From the NCBI GenBank assembly GCA_963924565.1, contig OZ004613.1, positions 20,274,001 to 20,338,000 of the forward strand: a stretch of DNA of 64,000 nucleotides. The letters are read 5' to 3'. The notes below the pieces were generated by a model that worked only from the letters and a program-made list of their open reading frames with translations, was not told the origin of the DNA and did no database searches. A program made the position numbers and the translations under genes. Source of the stretch: Ascidiella aspersa. Taxonomy: Eukaryota. How positions within the stretch are numbered: the stretch's first letter is position 1; the number at the start of each line of letters is the position of its first letter. Positions 30,562-64,000 of this stretch are shown piece by piece.

Positions 30562-30971
30562 TTAGTGATGCTGTTGATCCATCTCGTTTAACATTTCAAC
30601 ATGTTCTTGTGCCTCTTCTGAGAACAAGTCTTTCATATCTAGAGAGTTGTCTAGTCGAGAATCCTCTTCAGACATCTTCTCATTATCTGTCCAAACATTT
30701 TTAGACGCATCAAATTAATAAATTTTAATTGGATAAGTAACTTTAAATTAACTTGCAACCAGAACAACCGCAATTATTTATGAACTAAAATAACCATAAA
30801 AATTCGAAACGTATGTCCTTTATCAGACACAAAAAATAACTAACTTGCACTATCGTAGCGCCTTCGGGAGTAGTACCTTCTTCTTCGGCTCAACCAATGG
30901 AAGAGAAATGCGTCAACATTTGCGGTGGAGATAACCAAAACCAATAGCAGAAGCAAGCAAAGTTTGTCCAT
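30562..30971 (-). CDS. Secreted Trp/Arg/Tyr-rich peptide precursor, copy A (putative antimicrobial peptide, 83 aa); coding exons 30971-30845 and 30686-30562
   Basis: MDKLCLLLLLVLVISTANVDA-FLFHWLSRRRRYYSRRRY-DSANNEKMSEEDSRLDNSLDMKDLFSEEAQEHVEMLNEMDQQHH*. GT-AG phase-1 intron; 5'UTR intron 31122-30972; TATA 31173-31179; AATAAA 30527-30532. Confidence 0.88.
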
Positions 30972-31122
30972 CTAAAAGTACAAAAAATTTCAGTTATATA
31001 AATTGAAAACAACAACATTAGTGGTTATTTGTTAGAGTTAACATAAACTTAAATAATAGTATAAAAAAGTTACAAAAACTTCTGTTATCTCTGTGATTCA
31101 CGAAGTGTCTCATCTAACTTAC

Positions 31123-31345
31123 CTTGAAGTGCTGTTGCAAGTCAATAGTGCCAGATTATAGCTATGCCCCTTTTATATAACGCTGGCGCAGCTGTTCAAA
31201 TTTGTTATTGGCTGGAGAAGGGTTTTTCCGTGAAGCATATAAGGTCAACAATTTGGAGTCGTTGGACTTTTTCATCGCGACGAGGCAGAATATTATTGAA
31301 CGGAAATTTAGTGTTACACTTGTTAAAATATTTCCACGAGAACTA
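31123..31345 (-). promoter_or_regulatory. Copy A promoter and non-coding exon 1
   Basis: CAGCTG followed by TATATAA (31173-31179); donor AAG|gtaagt at 31123/31122; same layout in copies C and D. Confidence 0.7.
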
Positions 31346-33639
31346 AAAAATAAATTTTATTCACTTTGAACATACACCTCGTTATCTATACAGAAACGCT
31401 TTTATATCAGCAAAAATATTGCCCGAAAATATTAACACCGAATCGTAGTAATATCTGCGACACAATATGATCTAAGCCAGTCAGAATAAGCTAAAAACCG
31501 ATCGTTATAATATCGCAATGGCCAAAAACGTTAAATTCGTATAAATATAGTAAGGGATGATTTAACCCCATCATCTTGGCGTCGGCCATTATTGCATTGT
31601 CGTTTGCTTGTCACCATTTTGTCACTGAGCTGTTGCTTTTGGTGGTTTGATTTTGGGTTAGAATGTGTTGTTAATTCTCGAAGTTTAATTCTACGCGATT
31701 TCGTCGAGTCCCAAATCGGCTCTCTATAGCCTATATTTCACCCAGTAAGGTAACCAAAGTAAGATGAGTATTCAGCAATCCACTCACTTGGGTTTAATAT
31801 AACTCATCGACTCACAATACACTGTTTAAAAAAGTTTTATCGTATGCTAATCCACTTTTAGAATTTATAATTTGTGACCTTAGCAGTTTCCAAATGTTGG
31901 TACTGCGCATGCGCACGTCCGACTCGGGACTCAGCTTGTCTTATGTAATTTTCCTGGACTCCCGAGTCCTGAGTCCTACGATGGTAAAGCAAAGACTTTG
32001 TCGAGTAGCTCATCCCGAGACCCGAGACCGCGTACGCAGCCCTGTGGTGTTTTGTGGCTACGATCATAATATACGCACTCCCGATGTTAACGAAATATAA
32101 CCCGACGTTGCGGCAGCAGAAACCAGCTGACCGCATCAGGATTAATAATAATTAAATACTTCAGCGTCGTCTATAGATGGATTATTTTTTGTCTATATAG
32201 TCTTTTTGTTTTTTTACTCTTATATATACTGGCTAACGCATTCTCGTTTTAATTATTAATCCTAATGAGGTACACCAGAAGAGCGATTTATCTAGAAATA
32301 TATAAATTAAAAAAAAATAGCTAAAATAAAAATTACGGTCACCATTGGATTTCACCTAAAATTGTTTCTATTTCTTGTTTCTGTAGATTATATTTTGGCC
32401 GAAACTTTTGTCACCAAGAAAGTCGTCACATATTAATAATGCCACATGTTGGAAACGACTGGACGAATAAACGGCCATATTGAATAACAGTACTCAGAAT
32501 AAAACAGTTGTTTAGAAAGAGCATATGGCTTCGACCGCCGACCGGCGATTTTCGGACAAACTTTAAAATTGATTAAAAAGTGGCTATATTGATAAACAAT
32601 TCTTAGAATATATCTGAATGAAAAATTCCAAAACCAAAATATTGCTTAACTTTTAGTTAGAAAAGGACTGACGAGAAGCGATTAAATTGAAAATCGACAT
32701 ACAGATTTTATATAAACGTCTAGTTTTTTCAATAAAAGCATACACCCATAATTATTTGTTTAGAACTTCCATAATGAAAAATGTTTCGGTTATTCTATAT
32801 ATTTGATCATGCAATAGAAATCCAAAACTGAACAATTGAAATTTCCTAATTTTGTATTTGGTAAAACTGTTCTTTAATCTTTGGCACTTTGGCTTGTATA
32901 AATGATCAGGCCTATGATGAAAATTCTCACCTAAAATAAGTCGACTGTTTGCAGTTTTTTACGATACATGCATTTTGTCCACAAAAGTTTAAATTGATCA
33001 AACATTCTTCGAAACTACACCATAAGAAAAAAATTGCACAGTAAAAATACACTTGTCAGATATTGTATAAAACTTTTTTATTTCTTACACTTCATGCTCT
33101 TCATAGGTTTCTGCTGTGTTAGTTAGAACGCCCCATCTCCGTGATGCCAATTACTTGGCACTTATTTTGTATTTTGCTTGTGACTGTAATTAAATAGGGC
33201 TTACAGTAATATCAACTTTTTGTCCAACAATTTTATCAAGGGTCACCAACCCACGGTTCGCAAGCCGCATACAGCTATTATGTTTATACTGTATTTTTTA
33301 TAATTTTTTTGAGGTGCCCATAAAATACTGGCGGTCCCAGATGTGGGTCCGGACCTGTGAAATAATCAATGTGAATCTAAAAAAACGCCAATTTAAAATA
33401 TTATTTTAAATCGGTTAAAACAAACCAAAAGCCAAGCAAGTTTTCTACTGGCAAACCTATACCTTTATGGCGGTTAGCACTAAATCTATTAGTGTATGTT
33501 AATCTTTACAAGGGTTTCTTAAAATTTTTAGCGCTCATACCCTTTGAAATATGCCTAAACAGCACATATTTTACACTGCATGTCGTACCCCCTGCTTTGG
33601 ACCAAAATTCTCACACCAAAAATCGTCAAATAATAAAAG

Positions 33640-35700
33640 CTATATACATGAATTTCCTGGCGTTGCCTACGTTATATAGAGTATATACCAGTCTAATTCT
33701 AGTTAATAAACGGATGATATAGTTATACTGGATATGTAAATTATAATCTGAAATTTGCGTGGTTAAACAAAATAAAACAAGCCATTATAGTACTGTCGTC
33801 GCTTCATCACTATTGAATGTTATTGTCGGGTAGGTTTAATAAAGAGGGGGTGAAACATTTGGCCTCCAACGTATATCGCCCTTAAGTGTGATATATGGCG
33901 ATGCACCTCTCAGTTATTGGAGTCATTTTGCTGAAGCCACGTAGGTTATCATAAGACAATACGCTGCATTTAAACGTGAAGAGGGTATGAATTTTCCATG
34001 AAAGGGCAACACTAACAAAGTAATCCGCAAAGTACTGACAATTTCGCACTGTTTTGAAGCACGGAGCATACAAATCTTACTTTCACAAAGGCAAGACTTT
34101 AATTTGATTTTTACGAATACGAAATAGCTGCGTCTAACGCCAGACAAACCCGTCACCCAATTAAAATAAAAATTGCTTACTGTTAAAACCTTTTCAATAA
34201 ACGCGATATTTTGAACTCTGCCCAAATTGTGTGCGGTTAAACACACTATATAAAAAGCCAATAGGCTTGGCCTAAATCAGTATCAAATTGTTAGCGGGAA
34301 GGTTTGTTGGGCGCTATCCGTGTAAGTTTCCTAGTGGCTATTAAAAGTATGTTTAGAATACGACCGGTGGCGTGTAATAGCAGTCCTATTTGTCCGACTT
34401 GTGTAGTATTAAAGCAACCCGTAATCCCGGTACCAAATGGCGAACGAAGTAAGAAAAAATCTGATCGGACTTTAAAATTACATCTGCTTGCTATATTTTT
34501 CAAACTTTCAATTTAACGTGTGCTAAACATACTATAAGAGCTAAAAGTTCTAAAATTGTAAATTGTTAGACGATGTTTAAACCCCAAACTATAATCCAGG
34601 TATTTACGGAAAGTATATTATAATTGCACACTGTTTTGAACACCCCGAGCATGAAAGTCTTAACTTCGCAAAAATGATGACTTTAGTTTTTGTACCATGC
34701 GTAAAATTATGTAACCAAAAAGTAAAGTTGCTTAACTGTTAAAACCGCTGTAATAAACGCGATATTTTGCGAACTCTGCCTAAATTTTGAATGGTTAAAC
34801 CCACTGTTAGAAGCCATTAGGCTTTTGCCTAAATCACTGTTAAACTGTGGAAAAAAGTTTTTGTGAAAAAATGACGTTTGTTGTACAATACCCGAGTAAG
34901 TTTAGGATACGTTTTATATATGTGTTTCATAGCAAAACAGTAATGGCACTCGCAGCTGGTCGTCCCTATGCCGCTGATTGTGTGTGAAATAAAAACAATA
35001 TTTTCCCACAATACCGGTAAGACCTTATATGGAAACAGCCTGTGTTTCAAAAAACGGCAAATGATCGATTGGCACCATATTTAAAATAAATATGTAATGC
35101 CGCGGTGCCAAATCGTTCTCGGGTGGCCATTAGGTCGTTCCCTGTTAATTGCCATTACATATTATGTTGATAGACAACGTTTCAATGTGCTCATATCTCG
35201 CTTTATAACCGATGATATAAAATCTACTAGTGGCCATTTCGCATGTAATCAAAAGTTAATTATGCATAGTGTCCATAATAGTTCGTGAAAATACTCACTT
35301 AAATAAAACCGTTTAAGGATGCGAATGTTGTAGTATAGTAGTGGCTCCAACGCAACGAAATTTCGTGATATGTATAGCGATTGGAAGTAACTAACAAACC
35401 TAAACCTTATTTTTTTATTTAACCCTAAACGTTGCACTGCGTGGCACTACACGTTCGGTAAATAGACATTTTAAAACATTTGATGCGGTTTTTGAATTTC
35501 GCCGGTCATGGAAAACTTGTAGTATAAATTGTTATACAGCATATGTGTTGGTCGTCCCTGGACTATTTTCGCTGATTGTCCCTGAAATGGGTTAAAGAAA
35601 TGCTTCCCCACAACTTAAGTCACACCTTTAACCTGTGTTGAAGCGGCATTTAGTCGGATGGCGCGTTATGGCATTTATCTGCTTGACTGTGAAACTTCTG
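33640..35700 (-). mobile_element. Non-autonomous Helitron remnant (right arm of IR1, mirror of 25200-27242)
   Basis: Reverse complement of the left-arm copy; similar to 43848-44400. Confidence 0.6.
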
Positions 35701-37044
35701 ATTGTTCGTCTTCGTAAACTAAAATTTCCATAAATTTAATATTTTGTAATATGTAGCCTTGTAATGTTGTGTGTTTAGTAATATTGTGCGTTGGTCTGTC
35801 TGCCTCTTTAAGTTTACATGCCAGCGACCGAATATGCCGTATCGCCCAGCTAGTCGTTGTTAAACACGTCAAAATACCAGGTGTTTAGCATAAAATCGTT
35901 CAGGTGTTTATAATTTAACACCAACACTAAAATTAAACACAAAGGTGTTTAAATTAGGTGTTTAAGTGTTTAGATTTTAAACGTGTATAGACCGTTTTGG
36001 TGTTCAGATTTAAAAACCGTTCTACTTATACAACAGTATAAGCTAAGTTGTTCAGTCTTTCTCGTAATTTTTATTTTGTCTGGAGCATATGACTTGCTTT
36101 CTCGGCAAACATATGGCGTCGACCGCCGTCCGGCGATATTCGGACAAACTTTGAAATTTATTAAAAAGCGGCTATATTAATAAACTATTCTTAGAATATA
36201 TCACAATCAACAATTCCAAAAAGATAATATTGCTTTAGTTTTAGTTAGAAAATGATTGACGGAAAGCGAATACATTGAAAATCGGCATACGAATTTTTTA
36301 TGAGCGTCTTTTGTTTTCAGTGAAAACCACACACAATTCTTGTTTAGAAATCTTATATCAACAACAGTTCGGGTATTCTGTCAATTTTTGCAATGCGATA
36401 GAACCCGAAAACCGAACAATTAATTTTTTTAATTCTGTATTTGGTAAGACTGTTCGTTATTCTTAAACACTATGGCTTTTATAACTATAATAATAGCCTA
36501 TGGCGAAAATTCTCTTCTAAAACAAGTTGACTGTTTGTAGTTTTTTTTTTACAAGCATTTTGCCTAAAAAATATTAAATTGATTAACGTTGTTTGAATCT
36601 ACATCACTTAAAGAAAATTGTACAGTAAGAATGCCCTTTAACGACATATACACTTGCCAGAGTTTGTACCTAACTTTCCATCCGACCCGCCTCCTATTTT
36701 ACAAAGTATGGGTACGAGGCCATTTCCCATATTGTTTAATTCTTTTGATCTAATTAAACCTTTAACAGCGGACTTCGTAAAATTAACATGAAGAAATCTA
36801 ACAACTATATAATGACGGTCTGTAGACTTGCTGCCAAAGAAGTTAGTAAAATTAACAGTATTTGTTTTAACAGTGAGACAGTACAAAGCTCTTTTGAAAG
36901 AGATGGTAAAAAACAGTCGTTTTTGAGTTTGCTTGATTGGTAACGGATATAATATTTTATTTTATTATCGCAAAAACGCAGTCCTAATTCCTAATAGCTG
37001 AGAGAAATTTAGACCAATTTCGTAAATAGGCTGATATAGATTTT

Positions 37045-39312
37045 TTTTCAAATTTTCCCATATTTTTTAACAACTTTTCCCATATTAACTGCTGCACCTA
37101 AATTCAACCAATATCTTATTTGTTGCACCGTTTTTTTTATTTTACTCAACATATCGATTTACGAAAAACTTTTTTACTTTTTAACAGAATATATAACACT
37201 GGTTTACAAATTTAAACTCATTGAAAGCTACCGCCTCCCTATTAGGCGTTTCCCCCTATTTCGAGGTCACTGATTCCGAAAATGGCAGTAGTTTTTCCCT
37301 ATCACGTCAGGTTTTTCTGTACAGAATTTTTTGTTACGACATTATTATGTACTCTGAAGAAGAATTAGTGAAATTCTAAAAAAATGTCTTGTTTAGAATC
37401 AGTATATTTTTGTAATGCGTTTAATACAGACTGTCTTCCAGTATAGTTGGAAGCATATATAGTAGGGGGGGTCACGAAATCACTTTTATTTCGAATCCAC
37501 CTGCCTCGTATGGATTTTGATAGATAGACACCTAAAACCATTGTATACAAAATTGAAGCTGATTTGAACATGTATTGGTGTGAGGAAATCGAGTTGAATT
37601 TTTGCGGAAATTCGCAAAATCGGGTAAAAATGCGAAATTTTAGGTTATGTTTCACCTATATTTTCGAGTGAAATCCATCTACTGTGACCTAATATTTGTT
37701 TTTTTAGACATTTATGGAATAACTAAAGCAAGAAAGATCTGCAGAGTTTGCATTTTATCATTTATTTGCAGAAGTATTGAAAATTAAATTTGTGACGAAA
37801 ATCAAAATTTTATAAAAAAGGCAAAATTTTGGATTTGCCTTTAATTTGTACATTTTAGGTAAAACATGACTTTAAATTAATGTTTATGGAAGATAAAACT
37901 CATTACAAATAGATATATCGGCAGGAGACTGTGTTTTAATGCTAATATGGCCAGTATTAAAAATTGAATTTCTGCCGAAAATGTCAAAACAATAAAATTT
38001 GTCCATTGTTGCCTGTCACTGCAAATGACATAAAGTTCTGCTTTTATTTAGAATTTTAGATGATGCATGGATTTTTTCTGGAGTTCAACTTGGAAAGAAT
38101 AATTTCCTTTTCTTATTTTATTTACAAACAAATTTACTTGCTGCTATTAGATTCTATTAGCTCTTTCCATTGACTGGGAATAATGCGCAATTTTACTAAA
38201 CATTATTACAAGTTTTGGAGCATAATGGTTGAAAGTTGTAGTAAGACGTAGTAAGAATATGAAAGCCCATTCAGAAGTAGGGGGCATTTTAAACGTTTCG
38301 AATAACTCTTTATTCATTTTCATTATGTATTATATAACCTTTCTGATGTTTTCCAACTGATGTGGGCCTCCTTTAGTAAACTGGTTCTGTTGGATATTTC
38401 CAGTTTGTCATTTCGTTATAATCCACCGATTTAAATTTAGTGTTTTGGTATATTGAACTGTTTCACAATGTCATCTCCAAATCAATTTTGGCCATGTATC
38501 TATTTTAGATTATGGACCGCTTTTCCTCGTAATATTGGATCATTGTCAGCCCCTTACCAATGTTACAATTGCTCCCCGGTAGGCTACTCTATCCTTCATT
38601 TTATATAAAAAAGCCAAAGTGTGCATGATTTGGCGGAATTACAGTGAAAAGTTCATCTTACTGCAAAATTTAAATCTCTAATAAGACTGTGTTTTATAAA
38701 ATGGAATAACAATTTTTTATAAATTATGATTTAAGTCCCCTTTTTATATGTTCAACGAAATATTCGTTTTCAAAAAAGGTTGCCACCTTGGCTGGAGCAA
38801 ATTTGCTGTAAACCAGTGTAATAATTGATAACGTTATTTCGACAAGTTTCAAAAACATTTCTTGTCGTTTTTTTACTGGCCCAATTCTACATTACTTTTT
38901 TAGTATAAATCATAGGGTTTGATAGACTTGAAAAAAGGTAAAAAAAACAAAACCAAAAAGTGATTACTTAAAATAACTTTTGTTACATTAATAATGAAAT
39001 CTGTACGCTTGACGTTTCATCATTTCAACGGCGCTGGGACGTCCACCGAAAGTCTCCTTTCTTTTGCATTTGCCATTTTCAAGCTTTTTCACCGAACTGA
39101 TTAAAGCTATACACCGCACCAAACACGAAAAAACAGCAAGCATTTCGTTAATCGTTATTTTGGCAGAATCTGCATTTGTGGAGAGTCTGAAATTTTAAAC
39201 GTTCACTTAAGTTTTTTGAAAACAATGACAAAACGTCTTTAATTCATACTTTGTTTTTTCTTGTAGAATTTTTCTTGTCTCTGATCTTTCAACGATAATT
39301 TTTAAGATAGCC
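37045..39312. mobile_element. ~2.3-kb segment present only in the right arm of IR1; probably decayed transposon DNA
   Basis: Its flanks are nearly contiguous in the left arm (~24070). No intact ORF, TIR or TSD identified. Confidence 0.45.
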
Positions 39313-40469
39313 TTTTTTCACGTTTTTCCAGTAATTAGACAACGTAAAAGGATACAAATATGGTGCACGATTTTGTTCTGCGTACATTGATAGCATCCTA
39401 TTTTATCATTTTTTAAGCACATTGGTTAAATCCTATTTTACCAAACGAATAATGGAAATCATTTGCTCCAATTACACCCAAGATTGATTTGTTTTGGAAA
39501 CTTCTTTGTTTGTTGTCTATCGTTGCATTGTACGAATTAAATTAAATGCTTTTCTACGGCGTGCATCACCGTATCTTAATGTCCGGTGACAATCCAGTTG
39601 AGGTTTTGGTGTGAAGAATTGTTTTTTGTATTAAGTCGTAAACATTTTTTTTTTGCTTTAAAACATTTCAGATGCTGTACGCCACCTTGCGACAACTTGA
39701 TGCGGGAGTTCTAAACAGAGAATTGTGTGTGTGCTTTCATTGAAAAAAATCGTCATGCCGATTTTAAATTTAATCGCTTACCGTCATGGCTTTTCTAACC
39801 AACACACAAGCAATATTTTCGTTTTGAAATGTTTGAGTGTGGCACATTCTAAGAACTGTTTATCAATATAGCTGTTTCTAAGGGAGGCCGTTTTTAGGAT
39901 GTGACATTTTTAATGGGTGACGATGTTCTTGGTGAGAGAACTTTTAGTCAAAAAATAATCTATAGAAACAAGGAATAAAAACAATGTTAAGTAAAATTCA
40001 ATGGTGAATGTACTTTTTATTTGCTTTTAAAATCTTTTTCAGAGTATAGATGGGTCTCCAGCCATTAGACGGAGATAAAAACAATACCAACGTCAGAAAA
40101 AAACACAATTTGGGATAAGGCCAAAATAGAACTAATATATGATGGTATTAGTACTGTCTAAATCGGAATAAGTATTAAATCAGTCGGAATTAGACCTAAA
40201 ATGTCAGAACCAGGTCTAAACAACACTTTAACCAACTCCAAACCCCACCCCAAAGTACATCACTAAATCCCCTAATAATTTAAACACTAACCAATTATCT
40301 AACCCCACCCATCACCAGACGATAACCCCAAACAGGACCAAAAATGGGGTGCTCTGACGGCGCCGGTCAGACTAAAGTGTCCAAAATAGTCACCACAAAC
40401 ACCGATTGCATCCGATTGTACCATATCCTCTACCGACAGGTTCGGGCGTTATTTTGGCCATATTTACAC

Positions 40470-43639: not shown

Positions 43640-43847
43640 GATTATTACGAGGTGCATGTTAAAAGTGAATATAACTTACTCAATAGTTTTCGTGGAAATT
43701 TTACACAAGGGTATCTATAAATTTCCTTTCAATAAATATTCTGCCTCCTCGAACGACTCTAAATTGTTTACCTTTTCTGCATCACGAGAAAAATCCTTCT
43801 CCAACAAAAAAACAATTTGAACAGCTGCACCAGCGTTATATAAGTGA
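43640..43847 (+). promoter_or_regulatory. Displaced promoter of copy B
   Basis: acagctgcaccagcgTTATATAAG (TATA 43837-43843) matches the copy D promoter and is followed within 4 nt by the Helitron. Confidence 0.7.
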
Positions 43848-46701: not shown

Positions 46702-46908
46702 TGCATAACGATAATCTGGCACTATTGACTTGCAATAGCACATCAAGTTAAGTTAGATGAGTGACTTCGTGAGAGTTGACAAAGTCGTTGTCACTTTTAT
46801 TTATACTGGTAATTAGGTTTCTGTTAAATCTAACAAATGACCAGTATTGTTGGTTTTTCAATTCAAAAACCTGAAACCCATTTTGTAAGTTTAGAATCTA
46901 AACTTTAG

Positions 46909-52868: not shown

Positions 52869-53341
52869 GGATAAAGTTTCAATGCGTATAGGCACCATAC
52901 CGCTTCCATACCGCCAAACCAGTTTTTTTTACTAGGTCCTTTTATTACCAGGCCATCCATTCATAGTCTCGAATTTATTTAAACCTAGATACCATTTGCA
53001 TGTTTGTGTACTACGTTAAACGATACTCTTATAGGCTTTCTATATGTAGGTTGCTTGTTTTAAACTCCCCCTAATAACGTAACTTTGTCATCTCAATTTT
53101 TTTATTGTTTTGATAAGAAAATTATTTTACTTTCACCCCTGCTCGATAGTCATATGCGATTAAACCAAACTTGACTGTCCCAGTTGGAATCTAGAACTTT
53201 GACAACGTATTAAGTTCAACGTTTAACGTTTAGTAAATCGCGGTGTGTAAAAACTGGGTACCTTGAAAGTTTATGCAACACAAAGAAAACGCCATTGCTT
53301 TCAAATTTTATTATACTTTGCAGTATATACCAAATATCAAC

Positions 53342-53747
53342 TTAGTGCTGTTGTTGATCCACCTCGTTGACCATTTCAACAAGTTCTTGTGCCTCCTCTG
53401 GCAGCAAGTCGTCTTTCATATCTAGAGACTTCTCTAATTGAGAATCATCTTCAGACATCTTTTCATTATCTGGCGAAACATTTTTTAAACGCAACAAATT
53501 ACCATATTTTAATTGGATAAACTTAAGTAAGTTTAAGCTAACATGCAACCAGAACAACCGTGAATGTTTTTGAACTATCAGACACAAAAATCGACTAACT
53601 TGCAACATCGTAGCGCCTTCTGCGATAGTAGTAGTAGTACCTTCTTCGGGAGTAGTACCTTCTTCTTCGAGAGTACCACCACCATGCGTCGACATTAACG
53701 GTGGAGATAGCCAACACTAATAGCAAAAGCAAGCAGAGTTTGTCCAT
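53342..53747 (-). CDS. Secreted Trp/Arg/Tyr-rich peptide precursor, copy C (putative antimicrobial peptide, 91 aa); coding exons 53747-53600 and 53469-53342
   Basis: MDKLCLLLLLVLAISTVNVDA-WWWYSRRRRYYSRRRYYYYYRRRRY-DVANNEKMSEDDSQLEKSLDMKDDLLPEEAQELVEMVNEVDQQQH*. 5'UTR intron 53890-53748; TATA 53940-53946; AATAAA 53307-53312. Confidence 0.9.
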
Positions 53748-53890
53748 CTAAAAATACAAAAAGGGTTTCAATTTTTTTTAAGCAACACTACTAGTCATCT
53801 GATATATTTAACACAAACTGATTAAAAGCACAAATAAAAGATGCAACAACTTCTGTTAACTCTGTGATTCACGTCACTCATCTAACTTAC

Positions 53891-54100
53891 CTTGAACTGC
53901 AGTTGCAAGTCCGTAGTGCAAGATCATAGCTATGCAACCTTATATAACGCTGGTGCAGCTGTTCAAATTTTAGGGTTCTCCCGTGACGCATAAAAGGTAA
54001 ACAATTTAGAGTCGTTGGACTTATCCATGGCGAGGAGGCAGAATATTTATTGAAAGGAAATTTAAAGTTACCCTTGTGATAAAATTTCCACGAAAACTAT
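53891..54100 (-). promoter_or_regulatory. Copy C promoter and non-coding exon 1
   Basis: CAGCTG plus TATATAA (53940-53946); donor AAG|gtaagt at 53891/53890. Confidence 0.7.
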
Positions 54101-57100
54101 TGAGAAAATTTTATTTACTTTTAAAATACACCGATTTATCTAAATACAGAAACGTTTCTATATCGGCCAAATTGTTGCCTGAAATTAATAACACCGAATC
54201 GCAGTAATATCTACAGCAAAATTGTATCTAAACCAGTCAGAAGATGCCTCAAACACATCGGTGTAATATCTCAATGGTCCAAAGACGCTAAAACCGTAGG
54301 AAGATAGTAAGGGACGATTTGATGCCCCCATCTTGGCGTCGGCCGTTTTGGTATGCGAGTCTCTATTTTGGCACTGGACTGTTGCCTTTGTTTGTGTTTT
54401 GGGGTTTGAATGTTTTGTTCAGTTTGGAAGTTTAAATCTTATTTCTTACTATAACCTTATTCCGACTGTCAGGTATAAGTCCTATTTTTGTTTTAGTGTG
54501 AATTGTATTTTACAGGGCTGCGGACCTGCGGTGTTGGCAAAAAGAAATTTTACAATTGATCCAACTCTGCTGGGGTTTAGTAGAACTCATCGACCCACAA
54601 TACACAGGTACAACATAGTTCACCATATGCTTTTCCACATTTTCAATTAACAGTTTGCGACCTTATCAGTTTAAAAATGTTGGTACTGCGCATGCGCACG
54701 TCGGACCCTGGACACAGGTAGTCTCACGTAATCTTGCTTGAGTCCCAAGTCCTGAGCTCGACCATTGAAAAACAAAGACTTCGTCGAGTCCCTAATCCCA
54801 AGACCAAGTACGCAGACCTGGTGTTTCATTGCGACTTTTATGTTAGGCGAATTTCGGTTTTGATGCCGCAGTTGTTCTCTATAAGACAGTTCCAGGCTTC
54901 TTGTGGCTTTGAACTTTAGATACTTCTATTGGGAACTTCAAATTGATTGAACTAAGTAAATTATTTATTAGTATTCATGGGTAATAACCGTAAACTTTTT
55001 ACTGTCAAACATATAATTTTATGGGGGTTAGCAACGAAGCTGTTGGGTGTACTGTACATCAATCTATACTCTAAAAACGAATTTACAAACAAACGAAAAG
55101 TACATTGACGATTAAACTTAACTTAACATTGGTTTTATTTTGTCGTTTCTATGATTATCTATGGACTAAAAATATTCTAACCGAAAAAGTTGCCACGTCT
55201 TAATAATACCACATGCTGAAAACGATAAGCTTAAGAAACGGCTATATTGATGAGAATTCTTAGAATTTGTCAGAATCAAATATTCCAAAACCAAAAAATT
55301 GCTTTAGTTTTAGTTAGAAAAGCCGTGACGGGAAGCGATTAAATTTAAGATTGGCATACGGATGGAAGTGTCTATTTTTTTCAATGAAAACACACACACA
55401 TTTTTTGTTTAGAACTCCCGTATCAACAACGGTTTGGCTACTTTATCTATTTGATCATTCGATAATAACTGAGGTCGATTTGAAGAAAAAGCGACACAAA
55501 TGCAGTGCGAAGTGCGAAAAACTCGCGTCTATTTCGTTTAAAATGCAAACTGGGGCTGTAGTTTGCCCAGGTGTGGCTTAAACTAAAGATAAACAAACTT
55601 ATTTCTTCGCATTCTTATGTGCTCTCAACAAAAAATAGCTGAATTGATTTAACTCGACTAAAGTTGCTTCTTTACGATGTTTTCTAACATTATAACAGTT
55701 AAAAGTTACACCTACCAATTAAGCACCCCTAAATCCGTTCCCGGGTGTGTTATACCAAGTGACACGCTGTTTTTTTACAGGAATCTTTCGAGTCGAAGCG
55801 GGTAAATCATGGTTCAGTTCAAACTATATACCCTACTCATTTTATGTCTTCGTTTTTTATATAATCTGCTTTTATTATTCGCATGTAATTCTTGATACGC
55901 TTCGCTTTATATATCTGTCATCAATTCGCCATAAACCAAGCGATCCTTCCGAATATTAATTTCGTTCTACGGGCAAATTTGTTACTTTTTGGTTTAAAAT
56001 TCAAGCTTTCATTTAGAATGTATAGATGAACAAGACGCATAAAGAACAGATGAATATAAATCTCGTAAAATGGTAGCCTATTAACTATTGGGTTAAAATA
56101 TGTCAATCTTGATGTTATAAGAGATTGTATGTGGTCGATATACTAAATTTTGTTATAGCTTAATGACGGAATACATTCGATCAAAGCGTAAAAACTACAT
56201 TTTAAAATTTTAATTTTTTAACAGTACAGAGGGCGCTTTTAGTTTCTTAAGGTGTCAAAAGTAAAACATATTCGGAAGACAGCTGAGATTGGCGAATCAC
56301 AAAACTCCATTTATGTACTTTAGACAAGCAAAAAATAAAGTTTAGGGCGGCATGCCTGGATCAGGTCCTGGTAAGCCCAGTAGTGGTCCACGAGACAATT
56401 TTCAGTGGGATATGGAGCTCTTTGAAAATCTTGTTTGTATATAATTTAATTTACTAAATATAGTGTGCCCGCCAATAAATATTATCGACCGCCGACTATT
56501 TGGCGGGTTTCTGTAGATTATTTTTTGACTAAAAGTTTTCACACCAAGAAAGGCGTCACATATTGATCATAATGGCCCATGCTGAAAACGACCAGCCTTA
56601 AGAAACGGCTATATTGATAAACAGTTCTTAGAATATGTCCGAATCAAATATTCCAAAAACAAAATATTGCTTTAGTATTAGTTAGAAAAACCATGACGAG
56701 AAGCAAACAAATTAAAAATCGGCCTATGGATATTATATAGAAGTGTCTATTTTTTCAAGGAAAATGCACACACAATTCTTTGTTTAAAACTCCCGTATCA
56801 ACAACGGTTCGGCTACTCTATATTCTATTTGATCATGCAATAGAACCCGAAAACTAAACAAATAACATTTCTTAATTTTGTATTTGTTAAGACTGTTCTT
56901 CAACCTTAAACACTTTGGCTGGCACAACTAATAAAGCCTATAGTGATAATTTATTTCCTTCCTAAAACCAGTCGACTGATGACAGTTTTTTTTTACGATA
57001 CAGGTATTTTGTCCACAAAAGATTAAATTGACTAAACATTGTTCAAATGAAAACCACATGAAGAAAATTACACAGTAAATTACCCTTTAACAACAAATAC

Positions 57101-60100
57101 ACTAGTCGGAGTTGGTACATAACTTTTTTAATTCCTTGCACTGCTGTGTTAATTACAACTCCCTATTTTCCTGATTTAAGATTTAAAGGAAGACTGTTTT
57201 TGCTTCTTATGAAACAGTGCAATAATATATATCTGCAATTTTTTTTGTTTTACTCGTATGTTAACAAATAGAGCTTAAGGCAATGCAGTTAATTTCCTTT
57301 TAACTTTTTGTCCAACAAAGTTATCTAGGGTCGCCAACCCACGGTCCGCAAGCCGCATACAGCTTTTATAATGTGTTTATGATTGTTTGGACCGACAATA
57401 TAACTTTGCCCAGAAAATACACCCCGTCGTCCAGGTAGAATAGAGTCACAAACCGGCGCGGATTTAAGGGGACAATCATGTTGCATCAACTCTCAAAATT
57501 TTATGTTAAATTGGCATGGCACGTCACGAAAAAGTTTAGTCGGAACGTAACGTAACAAAGCAGGCATTTTCTCGAGACCAGCTGTTCTTGGATCTTCCCA
57601 TGAGCAAATGGGCAACTTCATAGGCTGAATAAAAGAAATAGCTATTCGATTTATGCAGGTGTACTCAACTGGCGGACCCCGATTCGGGTCCGGACATGTG
57701 GAGTGTTGAACGTGATTCTCAAAGAATGCCCAATGTACTAAAAAATATTTAAATGTGGTACGATTGAATGACATTTTCGACGAACTTGCTAAGAGGCATA
57801 TGACCATTGACCAACCCTTAAGCAGAAAGGCCGCATTGCCACACAAATTTTGATGAGCCGCCAAACCCATTAAATTAAAGGAGACGACGTCATAAGTTAC
57901 GTGATATTGTGACGTCATAAAAACAACTTAACATATAAACACCCGCTCTTCCAGTGTGAAGTCGAGCGCAAATATGCACGTAAATGTCGGCCTAGTTTAA
58001 AGTAGTTTAGGAAACGCTGTTGGCCACACTGCTATAGGTTTCTTTCATTATTCTTGATCGGACTACGACGTGGCCCGCTTTGCTGAATTAGCCTAAGACC
58101 ACCTTTCGTGAGGCCCACAGTTCTTGAACAGTTGACATGACGGCAATTTATAATTAAACCTTTTACTCAAACAATATAATCAATTTGTCACGCAGACGTC
58201 AAATAATGCACTCGGCCGAAACAAAATATAAAATATTGTTCAAAAATGCAAACATTCCGATGTTAATATGACTTACAAACAGTTTTATGTATCCATCTTG
58301 TATGGTACGTGTATTGGTTCTACACTGTCATAAAATAAATCTTGCGATGACTTTAAGTTACACGACAAATACCAAATACATAGGTCGATTTAAAATGTTA
58401 AGGAATTTTGTGTGTTAAGTACATTTATTATTTAATGCTGTTGGGCATTCAAACTATAGTTGACAAACCTTAAGATATTTAGCCTGCTTCTGTATTATAT
58501 CATCCTCCACATCTGGATAATCCTTATGATAAACATTTTGGTAATTCTTTTATATGAATACTTTTGCACAGCGTCAAAATTTCCAAAAAAGTGCTGCTTG
58601 TTTCACACCGTCCTAATTAAGGTTTACCCATATCCAAGGAAAACGAATTAATTGTGTGGTTAACCTGACGCGTGACTATACTCGTCAGAATATTCGTGTC
58701 CCTGTCGCGCGCCACGTATTGTCGCCCTACAGGCAACAGTTTGAACACCACTGGTTGAATGGGGTATTTAACAGATTTGTAATAAAGGCCCAATCGAATC
58801 TTAACATTCAAAATGTGCGCAAACGCTTGGTATAGTGACAGGGTTATATAAACACTTTCGCATCGTTTCAGAAATATATTTTTCATTCTCAGCAAGGAAA
58901 ATAGCTGATGCAAAATTACAGTTGTATAATAGGAGTTTTACTTTCTATGGTATAACTGATTTATAAAATATTAGTCCCCAATTTTCTGTAATTGGAGACA
59001 TTGTTTCACAGCGGGGGTCGCACTTGCTGGTTGTACGTGACATTTATAGACATAATTTATTAACAGTATAGTTTAAATATATCCACTTGGTTGAATCGAA
59101 ATCTTTAAAAGGTTCATTTTTCGCGTTTTATGACTAATGTTCACGGAACAAATAAGTATTAGTCTACAAACATTTCGTTAGGATGTTTTGCAATAACATT
59201 TGTATGTTTTCTGTAAAACAGCGCCTTTTTCCAGAGAAACAAAATTTTAATTTTTACCCTACTTATATGGGCCCTTTTTCACAATAAAATTTGGGTTATA
59301 TAATACAGTATATTGCTAATGTTTGTAAGCCCAACTCAGTAAATTTGCATAGGTTAACTATAAATACATTTTGTCATGTTGATTGCAGCTGCGGAGCTCA
59401 ATAACAAATTGAGACGTCACAATATCACGTAACTTATGACGTCGTCTCCTTTAATTTAATGGGTTTGGAGGCTCATCAAAATTTTTAAAGTGGCAATGCG
59501 GCCTTTCTGCTTAAGGGTTGGTCAATGGTCATATGCCTCTTAGCAAGTTCGTCGAAAATGTCATTCAATCGTACCACATTTAAATATTTTTTAGTACATT
59601 GGGCATTCTTTGAGAATCACGTTCAACACTCCACAGGTCCGGATCCGAATCGGGGTCCGCCAGTTGAGTACACCTGCATAAATCGAATAGCTATTTCTTT
59701 TATTCAGCCTATGAAGTTGCCCATTTGCTCATGGGAAGATCCAAGAACAGCTGGTCTCGAGAAAATGCCTGCTTTGTTACGTCACGTTCCGACTAAACTT
59801 TTTCGTGCCGTGCCATGCCAATTTAACATAAAATTTTGAGAGTTGATGCAACATGATTGTCCCCTTAAATCCGCGCCGGTTTGTGACTGTATTCTACCTG
59901 GACGACGGGGTGTATTTTCTAGGCAAATAAGCAAAGTTATATCGTCGGTCCAAACAATCATAAACACATTATAAAAGCTGTATGCGGCTTGCGGACCGTG
60001 GGTTGGCGACCCTAGATAACTTTGTTGGACAAAAAGTTAAAAGGAAATTAACTGCATTGCCTTAAGCTCTATTTGTTAACATACGAGTAAAACAAAAAAA

Positions 60101-63100
60101 ATTGCAAATATATATTGCACTGTTTCATAAGAAGCAAAAACAGTCTTCCTTTAAATCTTAAATCAGGAAATAGGGAGTTGTATATAACACAGCAGTGCAA
60201 GGAATTAAAAAAGTTATGTACCAACTCCGACTAGTGTATTTGTTGTTAAAGGGTAATTTACTGTGTAATTTTCTTCATGTGGTTTACATTTGAACAATGT
60301 TTAGTCAATTTAATCTTTTGTGGACAAAATACCTGTATCGTAAACAAAAACTGTCATCAGTCGACTGGTTTTAGGAAGGAATTAAATTATCACTATAGGC
60401 TTTATTAGTTATGCCAGCCAAAGTGTTTAAGGTTGAAGAACAGTCTTAACAAATACAAAATTAGGAAATTTTATTTGTTTAGTTTTCGGGTTCTATTGCA
60501 TGATCAAATAGAATATAGAGTAGCCGAACCGATGTTGATACGGGAGTTTGAAACAAAGAATTGTGTGTGCATTTTCCTTGAAAAAATAGACACTTCTATA
60601 TAATATCCATAGGCCGATTTTTAATTTGTTTGCTTCTCGTCATGGTTTTTCTAACTAATACTAAAGCAATATTTTGTTTTTGGAATATTTGATTCGGACA
60701 TATTCTAAGAACTGTTTATCAATATAGCCGTTTCTTAAGGCTGGTCGTTTTCAGCATGGGCCATTATTATCAATATGTGACGCCTTTCTTGGTGAGAAAA
60801 TTTTAGTCAAAAAATAATCGACAGGAACCCGCCAAATAGTCGGCGGTCGATAATATTTATTGGCGGGCACACTATATTTAGTAAATTAAATTATATACAA
60901 ACAAGATTTTCAAAGAGCTCCATATCCCACTGAAAATTGTCTCGTGGACCACTACTGGGCTTACCAGGACCTGATCCAGGCATGCCGCCCTAAACTTTAT
61001 TTTTTGCTTGTCTAAAGTACATAAATGGAGTTTTGTGATTCGACAATCTCAGCTGTCTTCCGAATATGTTTTACTTTTGACACGTTAAGAAACTAAAAGC
61101 GCCCTCTGTACTGTTAAAAAATTAAAATTTTTAAATGTAGTTTTACGCTTTGATCGAATGTATTCCGTCATTAAGCTATAACAAAATTTAGTATATCGAC
61201 CACATACAATCTCTTATAACATCAAGATTGACATATTTTAACCCAATAGTTAATAGGCTACCATTTTTCGAGATTTATCTTTATCTGTTCTTTATGCGTC
61301 TTGTTTATCTATACATTCTAAATGAAAGCTTGCATTTTAAACCAAAAAGTAACAAATTTGCCCGTAGAACGAAATTAATATTCGGAAGGATCGCTTGGTT
61401 TATGGCGAATTGATGACAGATATATAAAGCGAAGCGTATCAAGAATTACATGCGAATAATAAAAGCAGATTATATAAAAAACAAAAAACGAAGACATAAA
61501 ATGAGTAGGGTATATAGTTTGAACTGAACCATGATTTACCCGCTTCGACTCGAAAGATTCCTGTAAAAAAACAGCGTGTCACTTGGTATAACACACCCGG
61601 GAACGGATTTAGGGGTGCTTAATTGGTAGGTGTAACTTTTAACTGTTATAATGTTAGAAAACATCGTAAAGAAGCAACTTTAATTGAGTTAAATCAATTC
61701 AGCTATTTTTTGTTGAGAGCACATAAGAATGCGAAGAAATAAGTTTGTTTATCTTTAGTTTAAGCCACACCTGGGCAAACTACAGCCCCAGTTTGCATTT
61801 TAAATGAAATAGACGCGAGTTTTTCGCACTTCGCACTGCATTTGTGTCGCTTTTTCTTCAAATCGACCTCAGTTATTGATCAAATAGAAAAAGTAGCCAA
61901 ACCGTTGTTGATACGGGAGTTCTAAACAAAAAATGTGTGTGTGTTTTCATTGAAAAAAATAGACACTTCCATCCGTATGCCAATCTTAAATTTAATCGCT
62001 TCCCGTCTCGGCTTTTCTAACTAAAACTAAAGCAATTTTTTGGTTTTGGAATATTTGATTCTGACAAATTCTAAGAATTCTCATCAATATAGCCGTTTCT
62101 TAGGCTTATCGTTTTCAGCATATGGTATTATTAAGACGTGGCAACTTTTTCGGTTAGAATATTTTTAGTCCATAGATAATCATAGAAACGACAAAATAAA
62201 ACCAATGTTAAGTTAAGTTTAATCGTCAATGTACTTTTCTTTTGTTTGTAAATTCGTTTTTAGAGTATAGATTGATGTACAGTACACCCAACAGCTTCGT
62301 TGCTAACCCCCATAAAATTATATGTTTGACAGTAAACAGTTTACGGTTATTACCCATGAATACTATAATAAATAATTTACTTATTTCAATCAATTTGAAG
62401 TTCCCAATAGAAGTATCTAAAGTTTAAAGCCACAAGAAGCCTGGAACTGTCTTATAGAGAACAACTGCGGCATCAAAACCGAAATTCGCCTAACATAAAA
62501 GTCGCAATGAAACACCAGGTCTGCGTACTTGGTCTTGGGATTAGGGACTCGAGGAAGTTTGTGTTTTTCAATGGTCGAGCTCAGGAATTGGGACTCAAGC
62601 AAGATTACGTAAGACTACCTGTGTCCAGGGTCCGACGTGCGCATGCGCAGTACCATCATTTCGACACTGATAAGGTAGCAAACTGGGAATTTTAATGTGG
62701 AAATGCATATGGTGAACTATTTTCCACCTATGTATAGTGGGTCGAGGAGTTCTACTAAACCCCAGCAGATTTGGATCAATTGTAAAATTTCTTTCTGCCA
62801 ACACCGCAGGTCCGCAGCCCTGTAAAATACAATTCACAGTAAAATAAAAATAGGACTAATAGCTGACAGTCGGAATAAGGTTAGCAAGAAATAAGATTTA
62901 AACTTCCCCCCAAAAAAACATTCTAACCCAAAATCCAAACAAAGGCAATAGTCCAGTGCCATGGTGACTCGCATACCAAAACGGCCGACGCCAAGATGGG
63001 GGCATCAAATCGTCCCTTACTATCTTCCTACGGTTTTAGCGTTTTTGGACCATAGAGATATTACACCAACGTGTTTGAGGCATCTTCTGACTGGTTTAGA

Positions 63101-63224
63101 TACAATTTTGCCGTAGATGTTACTGCGATTCGGTATTATTAATTTCAGGCAACAATTTTGCCGATATAGAAACGTTTCTGTTATAAATAAATCGGTGTAT
63201 TTTAAAAGTAATTAAAATTTTCTC

Positions 63225-63435
63225 AATAGTTTTCGTGGAAATTTTATCACAAGGGTAACTATAAATTTCCTTTCAATAAATATTCTGCCTCCTTGCCATG
63301 GATAAGTCCAACGACTCTAAATTGTTTACCTTTTATGCGTCATGGTAGAACCCTAAAATTTGAACAGCTGCACCAGCGTTATATAAGGATGCATAACTAT
63401 GATCTTGAACTACTGACTTGCAACTGCACTTCAAG
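63225..63435 (+). promoter_or_regulatory. Copy D promoter and non-coding exon 1
   Basis: CAGCTG 63365-63370; TATATAA 63380-63386; donor AAG|gtaagt at 63435/63436; the intron ends tttttag directly before the ATG at 63579. Confidence 0.72.
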
Positions 63436-63578
63436 GTAAGTTAGATGAGAGACGTGAATCACAGAGTTAACAGAAGTTGTTGTAACTTTTATTTGTGCTT
63501 TTAATCAGTTTATGTTAAATATATCAGATGACCAGTAGTGTTGCTTAAAAAAAATTGAAACCCTTTTTGTATTTTTAG

Positions 63579-63984
63579 ATGGACAAACTCTGCTTGCTTT
63601 TGCTATTAGTGTTGGCTATCTCCACCGTTAATGTCGACGCATGGTGGTGGTACTCTCGAAGAAGAAGGTACTACTCCCGAAGAAGGTACTACTACTACTA
63701 TCGCAGAAGGCGCTACGATGTTGCAAGTTAGTCGATTTTTGTGTCTGATAGTTCAAAAACATTCACGGTTGTTCTGGTTGCATGTTAGCTTAAACTTACT
63801 TAAGTTCATCCAATTTAAATATGGTAATTTGTTGCGTTTAAAAAATTTTTCGACAGATAATGAAAAGATGTCTGAAGAGGATTCTCAATTAGAGAAGTCT
63901 CTAGATATGAAAGACGACTTGCTGCCAGAGGAGGCACAGAAACTTGTTGAAATGGTCAACGAGGTGGATCAACAACAGCACTAA
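63579..63984 (+). CDS. Secreted Trp/Arg/Tyr-rich peptide precursor, copy D (putative antimicrobial peptide, 91 aa); coding exons 63579-63726 and 63857-63984
   Basis: MDKLCLLLLLVLAISTVNVDA-WWWYSRRRRYYSRRRYYYYYRRRRY-DVANNEKMSEEDSQLEKSLDMKDDLLPEEAQKLVEMVNEVDQQQH*. A|gttagt...cgacag phase-1 intron. Confidence 0.9.
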
Positions 63985-64000
63985 GTTGATATTTGGTGTA

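What the first reader, a model, noticed from the sequence alone, without database searches (positions are those of the whole stretch)
30562..63984. Hidden four-gene family of secreted Trp/Tyr/Arg-rich peptide precursors (candidate new ascidian antimicrobial peptides)
Seen: four paralogues (A 30562-30971 -, B 46909-47316 +, C 53342-53747 -, D 63579-63984 +) share one layout: TATA, short non-coding exon, intron ending right at the ATG, an exon with a 21-aa hydrophobic signal ending VDA plus a cationic/aromatic core, a phase-1 intron, an acidic-tail exon and (A, B, C) AATAAA. Cores: FLFHWLSRRRRYYSRRRY (7 Arg), WWHYWYTRRRRRW (5 Arg), WWWYSRRRRYYSRRRYYYYYRRRRY (11 Arg, 9 Tyr, 3 Trp). Tails carry 14-15 Asp/Glu. 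The ORF track misses the signal/core exon in its true frame. Known: signal - cationic peptide - anionic C-terminal piece is the precursor plan of styelins, clavanins and Ciona Ci-MAM-A/Ci-PAP-A, and Trp/Arg-rich peptides are an established membrane-active class. From memory (unverified), a Ciona peptide starting WLSRRR and ending RRRRYD has been reported, so the family may have a known relative. Inference: these are processed host-defence peptides.
Basis: partly seen in the sequence, partly recalled or inferred. Interest (0 to 1): 0.92.

Follow-up and report, generated by a model that had tools for sequence, protein, structure and literature searches.

The report
Sea-squirt arginine/tyrosine-rich secreted peptide genes
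The window holds four of at least eleven small, spliced, strongly transcribed sea-squirt genes for secreted precursors whose short arginine- and tyrosine/tryptophan-rich middle part is probably a defence peptide; a related Ciona peptide already kills microbes in tests, so the family is real but only moderately new.

Summary
In a stranded RNA run, 402 reads from 83 start points join 53469|53600, the predicted phase-1 intron of gene C. About 120 more reads carry exon-1-like sequence spliced onto the ATG exon.

The family is larger than reported. A fifth copy lies 5.5 kb past the window. A second subfamily of six genes (C7, C9, C2) has no phase-1 intron and reads signal, core and acidic tail in one frame, which supports the splice independently. 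Gene B is probably dead: 2.86 kb is inserted between its TATA box and exon 1, its exon-1 donor is GT>TT, and constraint is relaxed.

The core is the least conserved part. The signal and tail of A versus C are under purifying selection.

No homologue turned up in any protein library. However, the motif WLSRRR led to Ohtsuka & Inagaki 2020: Ciona KH.C1.640 has the same plan, a synthetic core with MIC <3.125 uM, salt resistance and LPS induction. The family is therefore a new member of a known kind.

Function is inferred only. Cleavage at the Arg runs into small aromatic, possibly DOPA-modified, peptides remains open. Other scan notes on this genome (s1-801638, s1-790891, s1-801580) describe look-alike genes elsewhere.

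The parts
31171..31179 (-). Gene A TATA box
   Evidence: Read directly; aligned with the TATA of C, D and E.
31123..31155 (-). Gene A exon 1 (non-coding). The 5' end is approximate; the donor GT is at 31122-31121.
   Evidence: The exon-1 3' end ('cagcacttcaag|gtaagtt') is also conserved in subfamily 2.
30845..30971 (-). Gene A exon 2: ATG, 21-aa signal ending VDA, an 18-aa core with 7 Arg that contains WLSRRR and RRRYD. It ends in phase 1.
   Evidence: The motifs are shared with Ciona KH.C1.640.
30562..30686 (-). Gene A exon 3 coding part: acidic tail and stop codon
   Evidence: pN/pS against C is 0.39.
30527..30532 (-). Gene A AATAAA
   Evidence: It lies inside the 3'UTR block that is 91-98% conserved between paralogues.
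43683..43844 (+). Displaced promoter piece of gene B, with its TATA at 43837-43844
   Evidence: blastn to the upstream region of C; sequence read.
43845..46701 (.). 2.86-kb insertion between gene B's TATA and its exon 1. It holds internal tandem repeats and a (CA)n run.
46702..46747 (+). Gene B exon-1 remnant; the donor is mutated GT>TT at 46748-46749
46909..47020 (+). Gene B exon 2: signal plus a 13-aa core with 4 Trp and 5 Arg; phase 1
   Evidence: The reading frame is intact.
47189..47316 (+). Gene B exon 3 coding part: acidic tail and stop. AATAAA is at 47346-47351.
   Evidence: pN/pS in the tail is 1.2-1.65 against A, C and E, which indicates relaxed constraint.
53939..53946 (-). Gene C TATA box
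53891..53920 (-). Gene C exon 1 (non-coding, 5' end approximate)
   Evidence: 123 RNA reads run from the ATG exon into exon-1-like sequence.
53600..53747 (-). Gene C exon 2: signal plus a 25-aa core with 11 Arg, 9 Tyr and 3 Trp; phase 1
   Evidence: Translation; RNA depth of 270-400 in run X8.
53470..53599 (-). Gene C phase-1 intron (GT..AG)
   Evidence: 402 reads from 83 starts join 53469|53600 in stranded RNA run X8. Overhang consensuses decode to the exon-2 end and the exon-3 start.
53342..53469 (-). Gene C exon 3 coding part: acidic tail and stop. AATAAA is at 53307-53312.
63380..63435 (+). Gene D TATA (63380-63387) and exon 1, ending at 63435
63579..63726 (+). Gene D exon 2: signal plus a core identical to that of C
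63857..63984 (+). Gene D exon 3 coding part: acidic tail and stop. Its AATAAA lies just past the window end, in L002.
   Evidence: The RNA 3' ends carry the D-type 5-base deletion.
53326..64000 (.). Inverted segmental duplication that carries C and D head to head: arms 53326-57916 and 59413-64000, 96.6% identical
23654..39696 (.). Inverted duplication with gene A's transcribed unit in the central spacer: arms 23654-30086 and 31219-39696

Best explanation
These are genes for small secreted prepropeptides of an ascidian cationic-peptide family.

Shown:
- TATA-driven transcription and removal of a 5'UTR intron that ends at the ATG.
- Removal of a phase-1 intron between core and tail.
- High RNA level.
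- A leader with the shape of a signal peptide.
- A core that changes fastest between paralogues, by gain and loss of 18-base YYSRRR-type modules.
- An acidic C-terminal helix.

Inferred:
- The signal is cut after VDA (VEG in subfamily 2).
- The acidic tail (net -9 to -14) neutralises the core (net +5 to +13) during storage.
- A protease cuts on the N-terminal side of the first Asp, as reported for styelins and clavanins. In subfamily 2 the cut follows a Gly that could give a C-terminal amide.
- The released Trp/Tyr/Arg-rich peptide binds and disturbs microbial membranes, like the tested Ciona relative KH.C1.640. It may carry Tyr/Trp modifications, as styelin D does.

Gene B is probably a dead copy.
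For: - Gene model and expression.
- Intron-less paralogues read signal, core and tail in one frame. The split Asn codon is contiguous in them.
- Family pattern typical of defence peptides: core 63-78% identical plus indels, against introns 74-84%, tail 82-87% and signal 76-87%. pN/pS for A versus C is 0.11 in the signal and 0.39 in the tail.
- Charge balance of core and propiece.
- AF2 gives helices only at residues 2-26 and 67-83, the acidic tail.
- Published relative KH.C1.640 (PMC7387483): it shares WLSRRR, RRRYD and M-x-EED with gene A. Its synthetic core has MIC <3.125 uM on E. coli and S. aureus, stays active at 500 mM NaCl, and the gene is LPS-induced in haemocytes. KH.C7.94, built of RRR modules, is also active.
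- Look-alike genes in this genome have single aromatic residues or Cys pairs between Arg runs, and a Gly-Asp/Glu boundary. That only makes sense if the core stays whole.
Against: - No peptide, processing or activity data exist for these genes.
- The Arg runs fit furin/prohormone-convertase sites, so the core might be cut up.
- The two most Arg-rich Ciona peptides tested (KH.L63.9, KH.S1007.2) had no or weak activity on E. coli.
- AF2 predicts no helix in the core (pLDDT <50), so it does not fit the 'linear cationic alpha-helical' definition used for the Ciona set.
- The tissue and cell type of RNA run X8 are unknown.
- Homology to KH.C1.640 rests on short motifs compared by eye.
Confidence: 0.52

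Rival explanations
1. Multi-copy precursor of very small aromatic peptides. Convertases cut after each Arg run and a carboxypeptidase trims the Arg. This leaves pieces such as a 5-7-residue Trp/Phe/His-rich head, YYS units and oligo-Tyr blocks. These pieces are then hydroxylated, halogenated or decarboxylated into tunichrome-, plicatamide-, halocyamine- or morulin-like compounds.
For: - RRR/RRRR runs flank every aromatic block, and YYS-RRR is repeated 1-3 times per gene, as in multi-copy peptide precursors.
- Ascidian blood cells hold small DOPA/TOPA/bromo-Trp peptides made of just these residues. Their genes and sites of synthesis are unknown, and a ribosomal route has been proposed (PMC3039461).
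- The head of gene A has a Phe/Leu/His-rich make-up like plicatamide's.
Against: - The blocks end in Ser/Thr, not in the Tyr that would become the C-terminal dehydrodopamine.
- No block is a clean aromatic tripeptide.
- Related genes in this genome would yield useless 1-3-residue pieces, and some have Cys pairs spanning Arg runs.
- The repeat can be explained by slippage of an 18-base DNA unit.
- The whole KH.C1.640 core is active as such.
Confidence: 0.2
2. Tyr-rich cationic structural or adhesive peptide. Phenoloxidase or peroxidase turns Tyr into DOPA, and the peptide cross-links or glues tunic cellulose and sulfated glycans, plugs wounds or binds metals, like ferreascidin or the DOPA peptides of the Halocynthia holdfast. 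The acidic tail would keep it condensed in granules.
For: - Tyr makes up to 45-50% of subfamily-2 cores (9 Tyr in 18-20 residues) and 30-36% of the C, D and E cores (9 Tyr in 25-30 residues).
- RNA level is very high.
- Ascidians make 1.5-2 kDa peptides with about 50 mol% (halogenated) DOPA plus Ser, delivered as condensates and with no gene known (PMC13079984).
Against: - The holdfast peptides are reported rich in Glu/Gln, Ser and Gly, and the composition summary does not list Arg among the abundant residues.
- Paralogue cores A and B are poor in Tyr (3 and 2) and rich in Trp/Phe.
- Rapid diversification of the core fits defence better than structure.
Confidence: 0.13
3. A secreted signalling or other non-defence peptide (for example reproductive or neuro-endocrine), or transcribed genes whose products have no lasting function.
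For: The signal peptide plus basic runs are also the plan of hormone precursors. No functional data exist (searches found no annotated relative).
Against: - There are no Gly-basic amidation sites inside the cores.
- The cores are not conserved between paralogues.
- Signal and tail are under purifying selection.
- Copy number and RNA level are high.
Confidence: 0.08

Closest known systems
Ciona KH.C1.640 (Ohtsuka & Inagaki 2020, Sci Rep 10:12619; PMC7387483)
   Same: - A short secreted precursor with a signal, a Cys-free Trp/Tyr/Arg core and an acidic tail.
- Gene A shares WLSRRR at the head of the core, RRRYD at its end and M-x-EED just after.
- Function is known only from a synthetic core and RT-PCR.
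   Different: - It comes from another species: its primer has no match in this 308.6-Mb genome.
- Its core has one spacer (SSLFYW) instead of YYS modules.
- The distal tail differs.
- No oligo-Tyr blocks are reported, and no multigene cluster with an intron-less subfamily.
- Similarity was judged by eye only.
Ciona KH.C7.94, KH.L63.9, KH.L136.4, KH.S1007.2 (same paper)
   Same: Their cores are built of Arg runs alternating with a few aromatic or hydrophobic residues. Some have acidic tails.
   Different: There is no shared sequence beyond composition. KH.C7.94 is active, while KH.L63.9 and KH.S1007.2 are weak or inactive.
Ci-MAM family (Ciona)
   Same: - A 21-22-aa signal starting MD.K.
- An acidic C-terminal helix ending in a Met/Asp/Gln/His-rich stretch. 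Compare the published '...EEVMQKIMDHQ' with '...VEMVNEMDQQH' here.
   Different: The Ci-MAM core is an amphipathic helix with few Arg runs.
Styelins and clavanins (Styela clava)
   Same: Signal, mature cationic peptide and acidic C-terminal extension. Cleavage on the N-terminal side of Asp is stated in PMC7387483. Styelin D carries DOPA.
   Different: They are Phe/His/Lys-rich helical peptides with no sequence similarity and no Arg-run modules.
Trp/Arg-rich antimicrobial peptides (indolicidin, tritrpticin, lactoferricin fragments)
   Same: Short, non-helical, Arg plus aromatic pharmacophore; membrane-active (established knowledge).
   Different: They come from cathelicidin or lactoferrin precursors. 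There is no acidic C-terminal propiece and no Tyr blocks. This is analogy only.
Tunichromes, plicatamide, morulin Pm, Halocynthia holdfast DOPA peptides
   Same: They are made of Tyr/Trp/Phe/His-derived residues, occur in ascidian blood or tunic cells, and have no known genes.
   Different: They are much shorter or Arg-free as reported. There is no sequence to compare, so the link is compositional only.

Membership tests
Ciona LCAMP-type precursors as defined in PMC7387483 (KH.C1.640 group) | 50-100-aa precursor with an N-terminal signal peptide | tested here: met
   Subfamily-2 open frames are 72-84 aa. Exon sums for A-E fall in the same range. The leader has a charged start, 11-12 hydrophobic residues, and Val at -3 with Ala/Gly at -1, read directly. 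AF2 gives a helix at residues 2-26. SignalP was not available.
Ciona LCAMP-type precursors as defined in PMC7387483 (KH.C1.640 group) | Cys-free cationic segment directly after the signal | tested here: met
   Cores have net charge +5 to +13, with no Cys and no Lys.
Ciona LCAMP-type precursors as defined in PMC7387483 (KH.C1.640 group) | Cationic segment forms an amphipathic alpha-helix | tested here: inconclusive
   AF2 on a 4-sequence alignment gives no helix and pLDDT <50 over the core. Short peptides are poorly predicted in any case.
Ciona LCAMP-type precursors as defined in PMC7387483 (KH.C1.640 group) | Anionic helical region at the C-terminus | tested here: met
   14-17 Asp/Glu in A-E and 12-13 in subfamily 2. 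AF2 helix at 67-83, with pLDDT about 77 over residues 71-80.
Ciona LCAMP-type precursors as defined in PMC7387483 (KH.C1.640 group) | Sequence homology to KH.C1.640 | tested here: inconclusive
   Gene A shares WLSRRR, RRRYD and M-x-EED, judged by eye against Tables 1 and 3. No computed alignment was made, because the published sequence has no reference here. Protein searches did not return it.
Ciona LCAMP-type precursors as defined in PMC7387483 (KH.C1.640 group) | Antimicrobial activity of the core; induction by LPS in haemocytes | not testable with these tools
   Only transcription could be shown. The sample type of run X8 is not given.
Ci-MAM family | Conserved signal consensus MDRKIVFALxLVxxLxVSxxxA and conserved acidic proregion (PMC7387483) | tested here: inconclusive
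   The signal here starts MDKL or MNKL, is 21 aa long and ends in A or G. The tail end resembles Ci-MAM-D/E by eye. No statistical test was possible.
Cathelicidin-derived Trp/Arg peptides (indolicidin type) | N-terminal cathelin proregion | tested here: not met
   There is no proregion between signal and core, and no Pfam family is found.
Ribosomal precursors of tunichrome-like DOPA/TOPA peptides | Native product carries DOPA/TOPA/bromo-Trp and matches a block of the core | not testable with these tools
   No gene of this kind is known. Mass spectrometry is needed.

The most novel reading that the evidence does not exclude
The oligo-Tyr/Trp blocks between Arg runs are cut out and modified. On this reading, these genes are the long-missing ribosomal precursors of ascidian DOPA/TOPA/bromo-Trp peptides (tunichrome-, morulin- or plicatamide-like, or the halogenated-DOPA glue peptides). 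The acidic tail would serve as a packaging partner in granules.
Probability: 0.13. Interest if true: 0.85.

Novelty: new member of a known kind. Interest (0 to 1): 0.5.

Why it matters
- It adds a well-supported, highly expressed multigene family to the small set of known ascidian cationic peptide precursors: at least 11 genes, in two subfamilies that differ by one intron.
- It shows that the Ciona peptide KH.C1.640 is not an orphan.
- The cores are unusual: only Arg, aromatic residues and Ser/Thr, no Lys, with up to 9 Tyr and 13 Arg in 30 residues. They diversify by gain and loss of an 18-base module.
- They are cheap to synthesise and test as salt-tolerant antimicrobials.
- They give concrete masses to look for in the old, unsolved question of where ascidian DOPA/TOPA peptides come from.

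Tried and rejected
- Protein homology searches found nothing:
  - an intron-less member, whole;
  - the acidic tail of C, scored alone inside a 124-aa open frame;
  - exon 2 of A.
- A profile of four subfamily-2 proteins against 1.84 billion representatives gave only five spurious low-complexity or repeat proteins.
- ESM Atlas: best score 0.80, which is chance level.
- Pfam: only a below-threshold chance hit.
- Rfam on the window: nothing.
- Paper search for the YYSRRR-type motifs: no ascidian paper. KH.C1.640 appears in one paper only.
- The genome is not Ciona robusta: the KH.C1.640 primer is absent and the genome is 308.6 Mb.
- The interspersed 250-770-bp repeat between the genes is not a genome-wide transposon. 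All 12 copies lie in this cluster, and it is silent in X8.
- Retrogene origin of subfamily 2 is rejected. These genes keep the TATA box, exon 1 and the 5'UTR intron.
- RNA run X2 (seawater) laid no contig. X1 holds only an unspliced 234-base contig, so it gives no support.
- Left out on purpose:
  - the spliced proteins were never joined, and exons were searched apart by reference;
  - the published KH.C1.640 and Ci-MAM letters have no reference here, so no computed alignment with them was made;
  - expression of A and B could not be tested, because the single read-laying run went to C.
Full report
**What is there.**
- a TATA box;
- a short non-coding exon ending '...ttcaag|gtaagt';
- an intron whose AG abuts the ATG;
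- an exon coding a 21-residue hydrophobic leader ending VDA, followed by a core made only of Arg, Trp/Tyr/Phe/His, Ser/Thr and Leu;
- a donor after the first base of a codon;
- a last exon coding an acidic tail;
- AATAAA about 30 bases after the stop.

The three quoted cores and their Arg/Tyr/Trp counts are right. The window has no N. The units are 75-77% (A/B/C) to 97% (C/D) identical over about 1 kb, so chance is excluded.

**Transcription and splicing.** One RNA run of raw, stranded reads (X8, about 6% of it read) was laid on 52950-58900.
- 402 reads from 83 start points join 53469 to 53600. They skip 130 bases with GT..AG on the minus strand, exactly the predicted phase-1 intron of C.
- The short overhangs decode to the end of exon 2 and the start of exon 3.
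- All first mates lie on the plus strand, as expected for a minus-strand RNA in a dUTP-type library.
- 123 reads run from the ATG exon into sequence that matches exon 1 of C/D/E at 13 of 15 bases. The acceptor at the ATG is therefore used; the donor side is supported only by that similarity.
- Depth over the exons is 270-400, and zero over 53945-58900.
- Part of that depth comes from paralogues. About 700 reads fit only 53630-53662 and continue into sequence coding NVEGWWSRR and RRRYHGDVN, which is a subfamily-2 gene (exact match to L006 on one side).
- X1 holds only an unspliced contig, X3 is DNA, and X2 laid nothing.

**The family is larger.** The window is G000:C7:20274001-20338000 in a 308.6-Mb genome.
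- A fifth close copy, E, lies at C7:20343493-20344217. It is intact and has three tandem 18-base YYSRRR-type units.
- Six further genes form a second subfamily: three on C7 within 54 kb of D, two identical copies on C9, and one on C2.
- Subfamily 2 keeps the TATA box, exon 1 and the 5'UTR intron, but it has no phase-1 intron. Signal, core and tail stand in one open frame of 72-84 codons, and the Asn codon that is split in A-D (Asp in E) is contiguous. This confirms the reading frame across the splice independently and rules out a retrogene origin.
- The C2 copy has an in-frame TGA in the reference, yet X8 holds abundant reads of an intact version.
- At E-values of 0.03-1 the genome also holds look-alikes. 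These have an MNK... leader, Arg runs separated by one to three aromatic residues (some with Cys pairs), a Gly-Asp/Glu boundary and an acidic tail. They include a tandem array of at least nine on C1. Their homology to this family is not established.

**Evolution.**
- In a five-gene DNA alignment the core is the least conserved part: 63-78% identity plus many indels. Introns are 74-84%, the tail 82-87%, the signal 76-87%, and the first 56 bases of the 3'UTR 91-98%.
- pN/pS between A and C is 0.11 (signal) and 0.39 (tail). Pairs with B give 1.2-1.65 in the tail (small counts).
- B also has 2.86 kb inserted exactly between its TATA box (43837-43844) and exon 1 (46702), and its exon-1 donor is TT. 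Its frame is intact, but it is probably dead. I could not test its RNA.
- The genes sit in inverted segmental duplications.

**Protein features.**
- Cores carry net +5 to +13 with no Lys. Propieces carry net -9 to -14.
- AF2 on the subfamily-2 alignment gives helices only at 2-26 (leader) and 67-83 (acidic tail). The core is below pLDDT 50.
- The leader obeys the -3/-1 rule (Val, Ala or Gly), read directly. SignalP was not available.

**Comparison with what is known.**
- No library returned a relative.
- A text search for WLSRRR found Ohtsuka & Inagaki 2020 (PMC7387483).
- Ciona KH.C1.640 has the same plan and shares WLSRRR, RRRYD and M-x-EED with gene A, judged by eye.
- Its 14-residue synthetic core has MIC <3.125 uM on E. 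coli and S. aureus and 12.5 uM on yeast. It keeps activity at 500 mM NaCl, and the gene is induced by LPS in haemocytes.
- KH.C7.94, built of RRR modules, is also active. KH.L63.9 and KH.S1007.2, both very Arg-rich, were weak or inactive.
- The paper notes that ascidian precursors seem to be cut on the N-terminal side of Asp/Glu, as in styelins and clavanins. That fits the invariant aromatic-Asp or Gly-Asp boundary here.
- The acidic helix also resembles the Ci-MAM tail by eye.
The spliced proteins were not joined either; exons were searched apart.
- The KH.C1.640 primer has no match in this genome, so the species differs from C. robusta. A GH6 piece in the genome and other notes of the scan fit an ascidian.

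**Interpretation.**
- Best reading (about 0.5): a defence-type prepropeptide whose whole cationic aromatic core is released from a neutralising acidic tail.
- Main rival (about 0.2): the Arg runs are convertase sites, and the products are small aromatic peptides that are then modified.
[quoted passage not shown] Halogenated-DOPA peptides of the Halocynthia holdfast were sequenced only de novo (PMC13079984).
- Against the rival: the blocks end in Ser/Thr, and the look-alike genes would give meaningless fragments.
- A structural or adhesive DOPA-peptide role (about 0.13) fits the 45-50% Tyr of subfamily-2 cores and the 30-36% of C, D and E. It does not fit the Trp/Phe-rich cores of A and B.
- These readings are not exclusive, since styelin D is a DOPA-bearing antimicrobial peptide.

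**Verdict.** The family is a new member of a known kind. Interest is moderate and would rise sharply if mass spectrometry tied the cores to modified aromatic peptides. Other notes of this scan describe similar Arg/Tyr/Trp-rich secreted peptide genes elsewhere in the same genome.

Noticed in passing
window 24903-25202, 27753-28522, 32573-33281, 36161-36677, 55231-55464, 56598-57369, 59971-60738, 61877-62102: A 250-770-bp repeat unit lies upstream of the peptide genes. All 12 genome copies lie inside this one cluster (C7:20298811-20342481), so it is not a dispersed transposon. It had no RNA in run X8. Its role is unknown; it could be a regulatory module or a relic of another gene.
   Followed up: partly
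window 30527-30561, 47317-47372, 53290-53341 (first ~56 bases after each stop codon): The start of the 3'UTR is the most conserved part of the whole unit. It is 91-98% identical between paralogues whose introns are 74-84% identical, which hints at a post-transcriptional control element.
   Followed up: no
window 30301-30308, 47569-47576; also D and E in L002/L003: A perfect TGACGTCA palindrome sits about 250 bases downstream of the poly(A) signal in A, B, D and E. It is deleted in C.
   Followed up: no
L006 (G000:C2:17387371-17387628, minus strand): The reference copy has an in-frame TGA in the core. RNA run X8 nevertheless holds about 700 reads of an intact version whose upstream part matches this locus exactly. 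This could be a polymorphic null allele or an unassembled paralogue.
   Followed up: partly
L007 1375-1440 (also L008, L011): A degenerate, stop-containing duplicate of the signal exon, with its own AG|ATG acceptor, lies inside the 5'UTR intron of subfamily-2 genes.
   Followed up: no
G000:C1:8899888-8960181 (L039-L046), C1:9054879, C2:26547971-26579561, C2:28119278, C7:14078293: Further small genes share the same design: an MNK leader, Arg runs with aromatic residues, a Gly-Asp/Glu boundary and an acidic tail. They include a tandem array of at least nine copies about 9 kb apart. C7:14078293 has the same ...STANVDA leader but a Lys/Pro-rich core.
   Followed up: partly
window 53386-53387: All 316 RNA reads at this spot code Gln-Gln-Leu, where C has Gln-Glu-Leu and D has Gln-Lys-Leu. 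The sequenced animal carries another allele or another near-identical copy.
   Followed up: no
window 53960-53990 and the aligned sites in A, D and E: A conserved upstream block holds TGCGTCA next to GGGAGAACCC, a 9-of-10 match to the classical kappaB consensus in C and E only. It lies about 20-50 bases upstream of the TATA box. This was read by eye and not tested.
   Followed up: no
window 1-23000: Six open frames of 123-141 codons (five in this stretch and one at 57496-57918) have no Pfam match, and the window has no Rfam match. No other gene was recognised in the first third of the window.
   Followed up: partly
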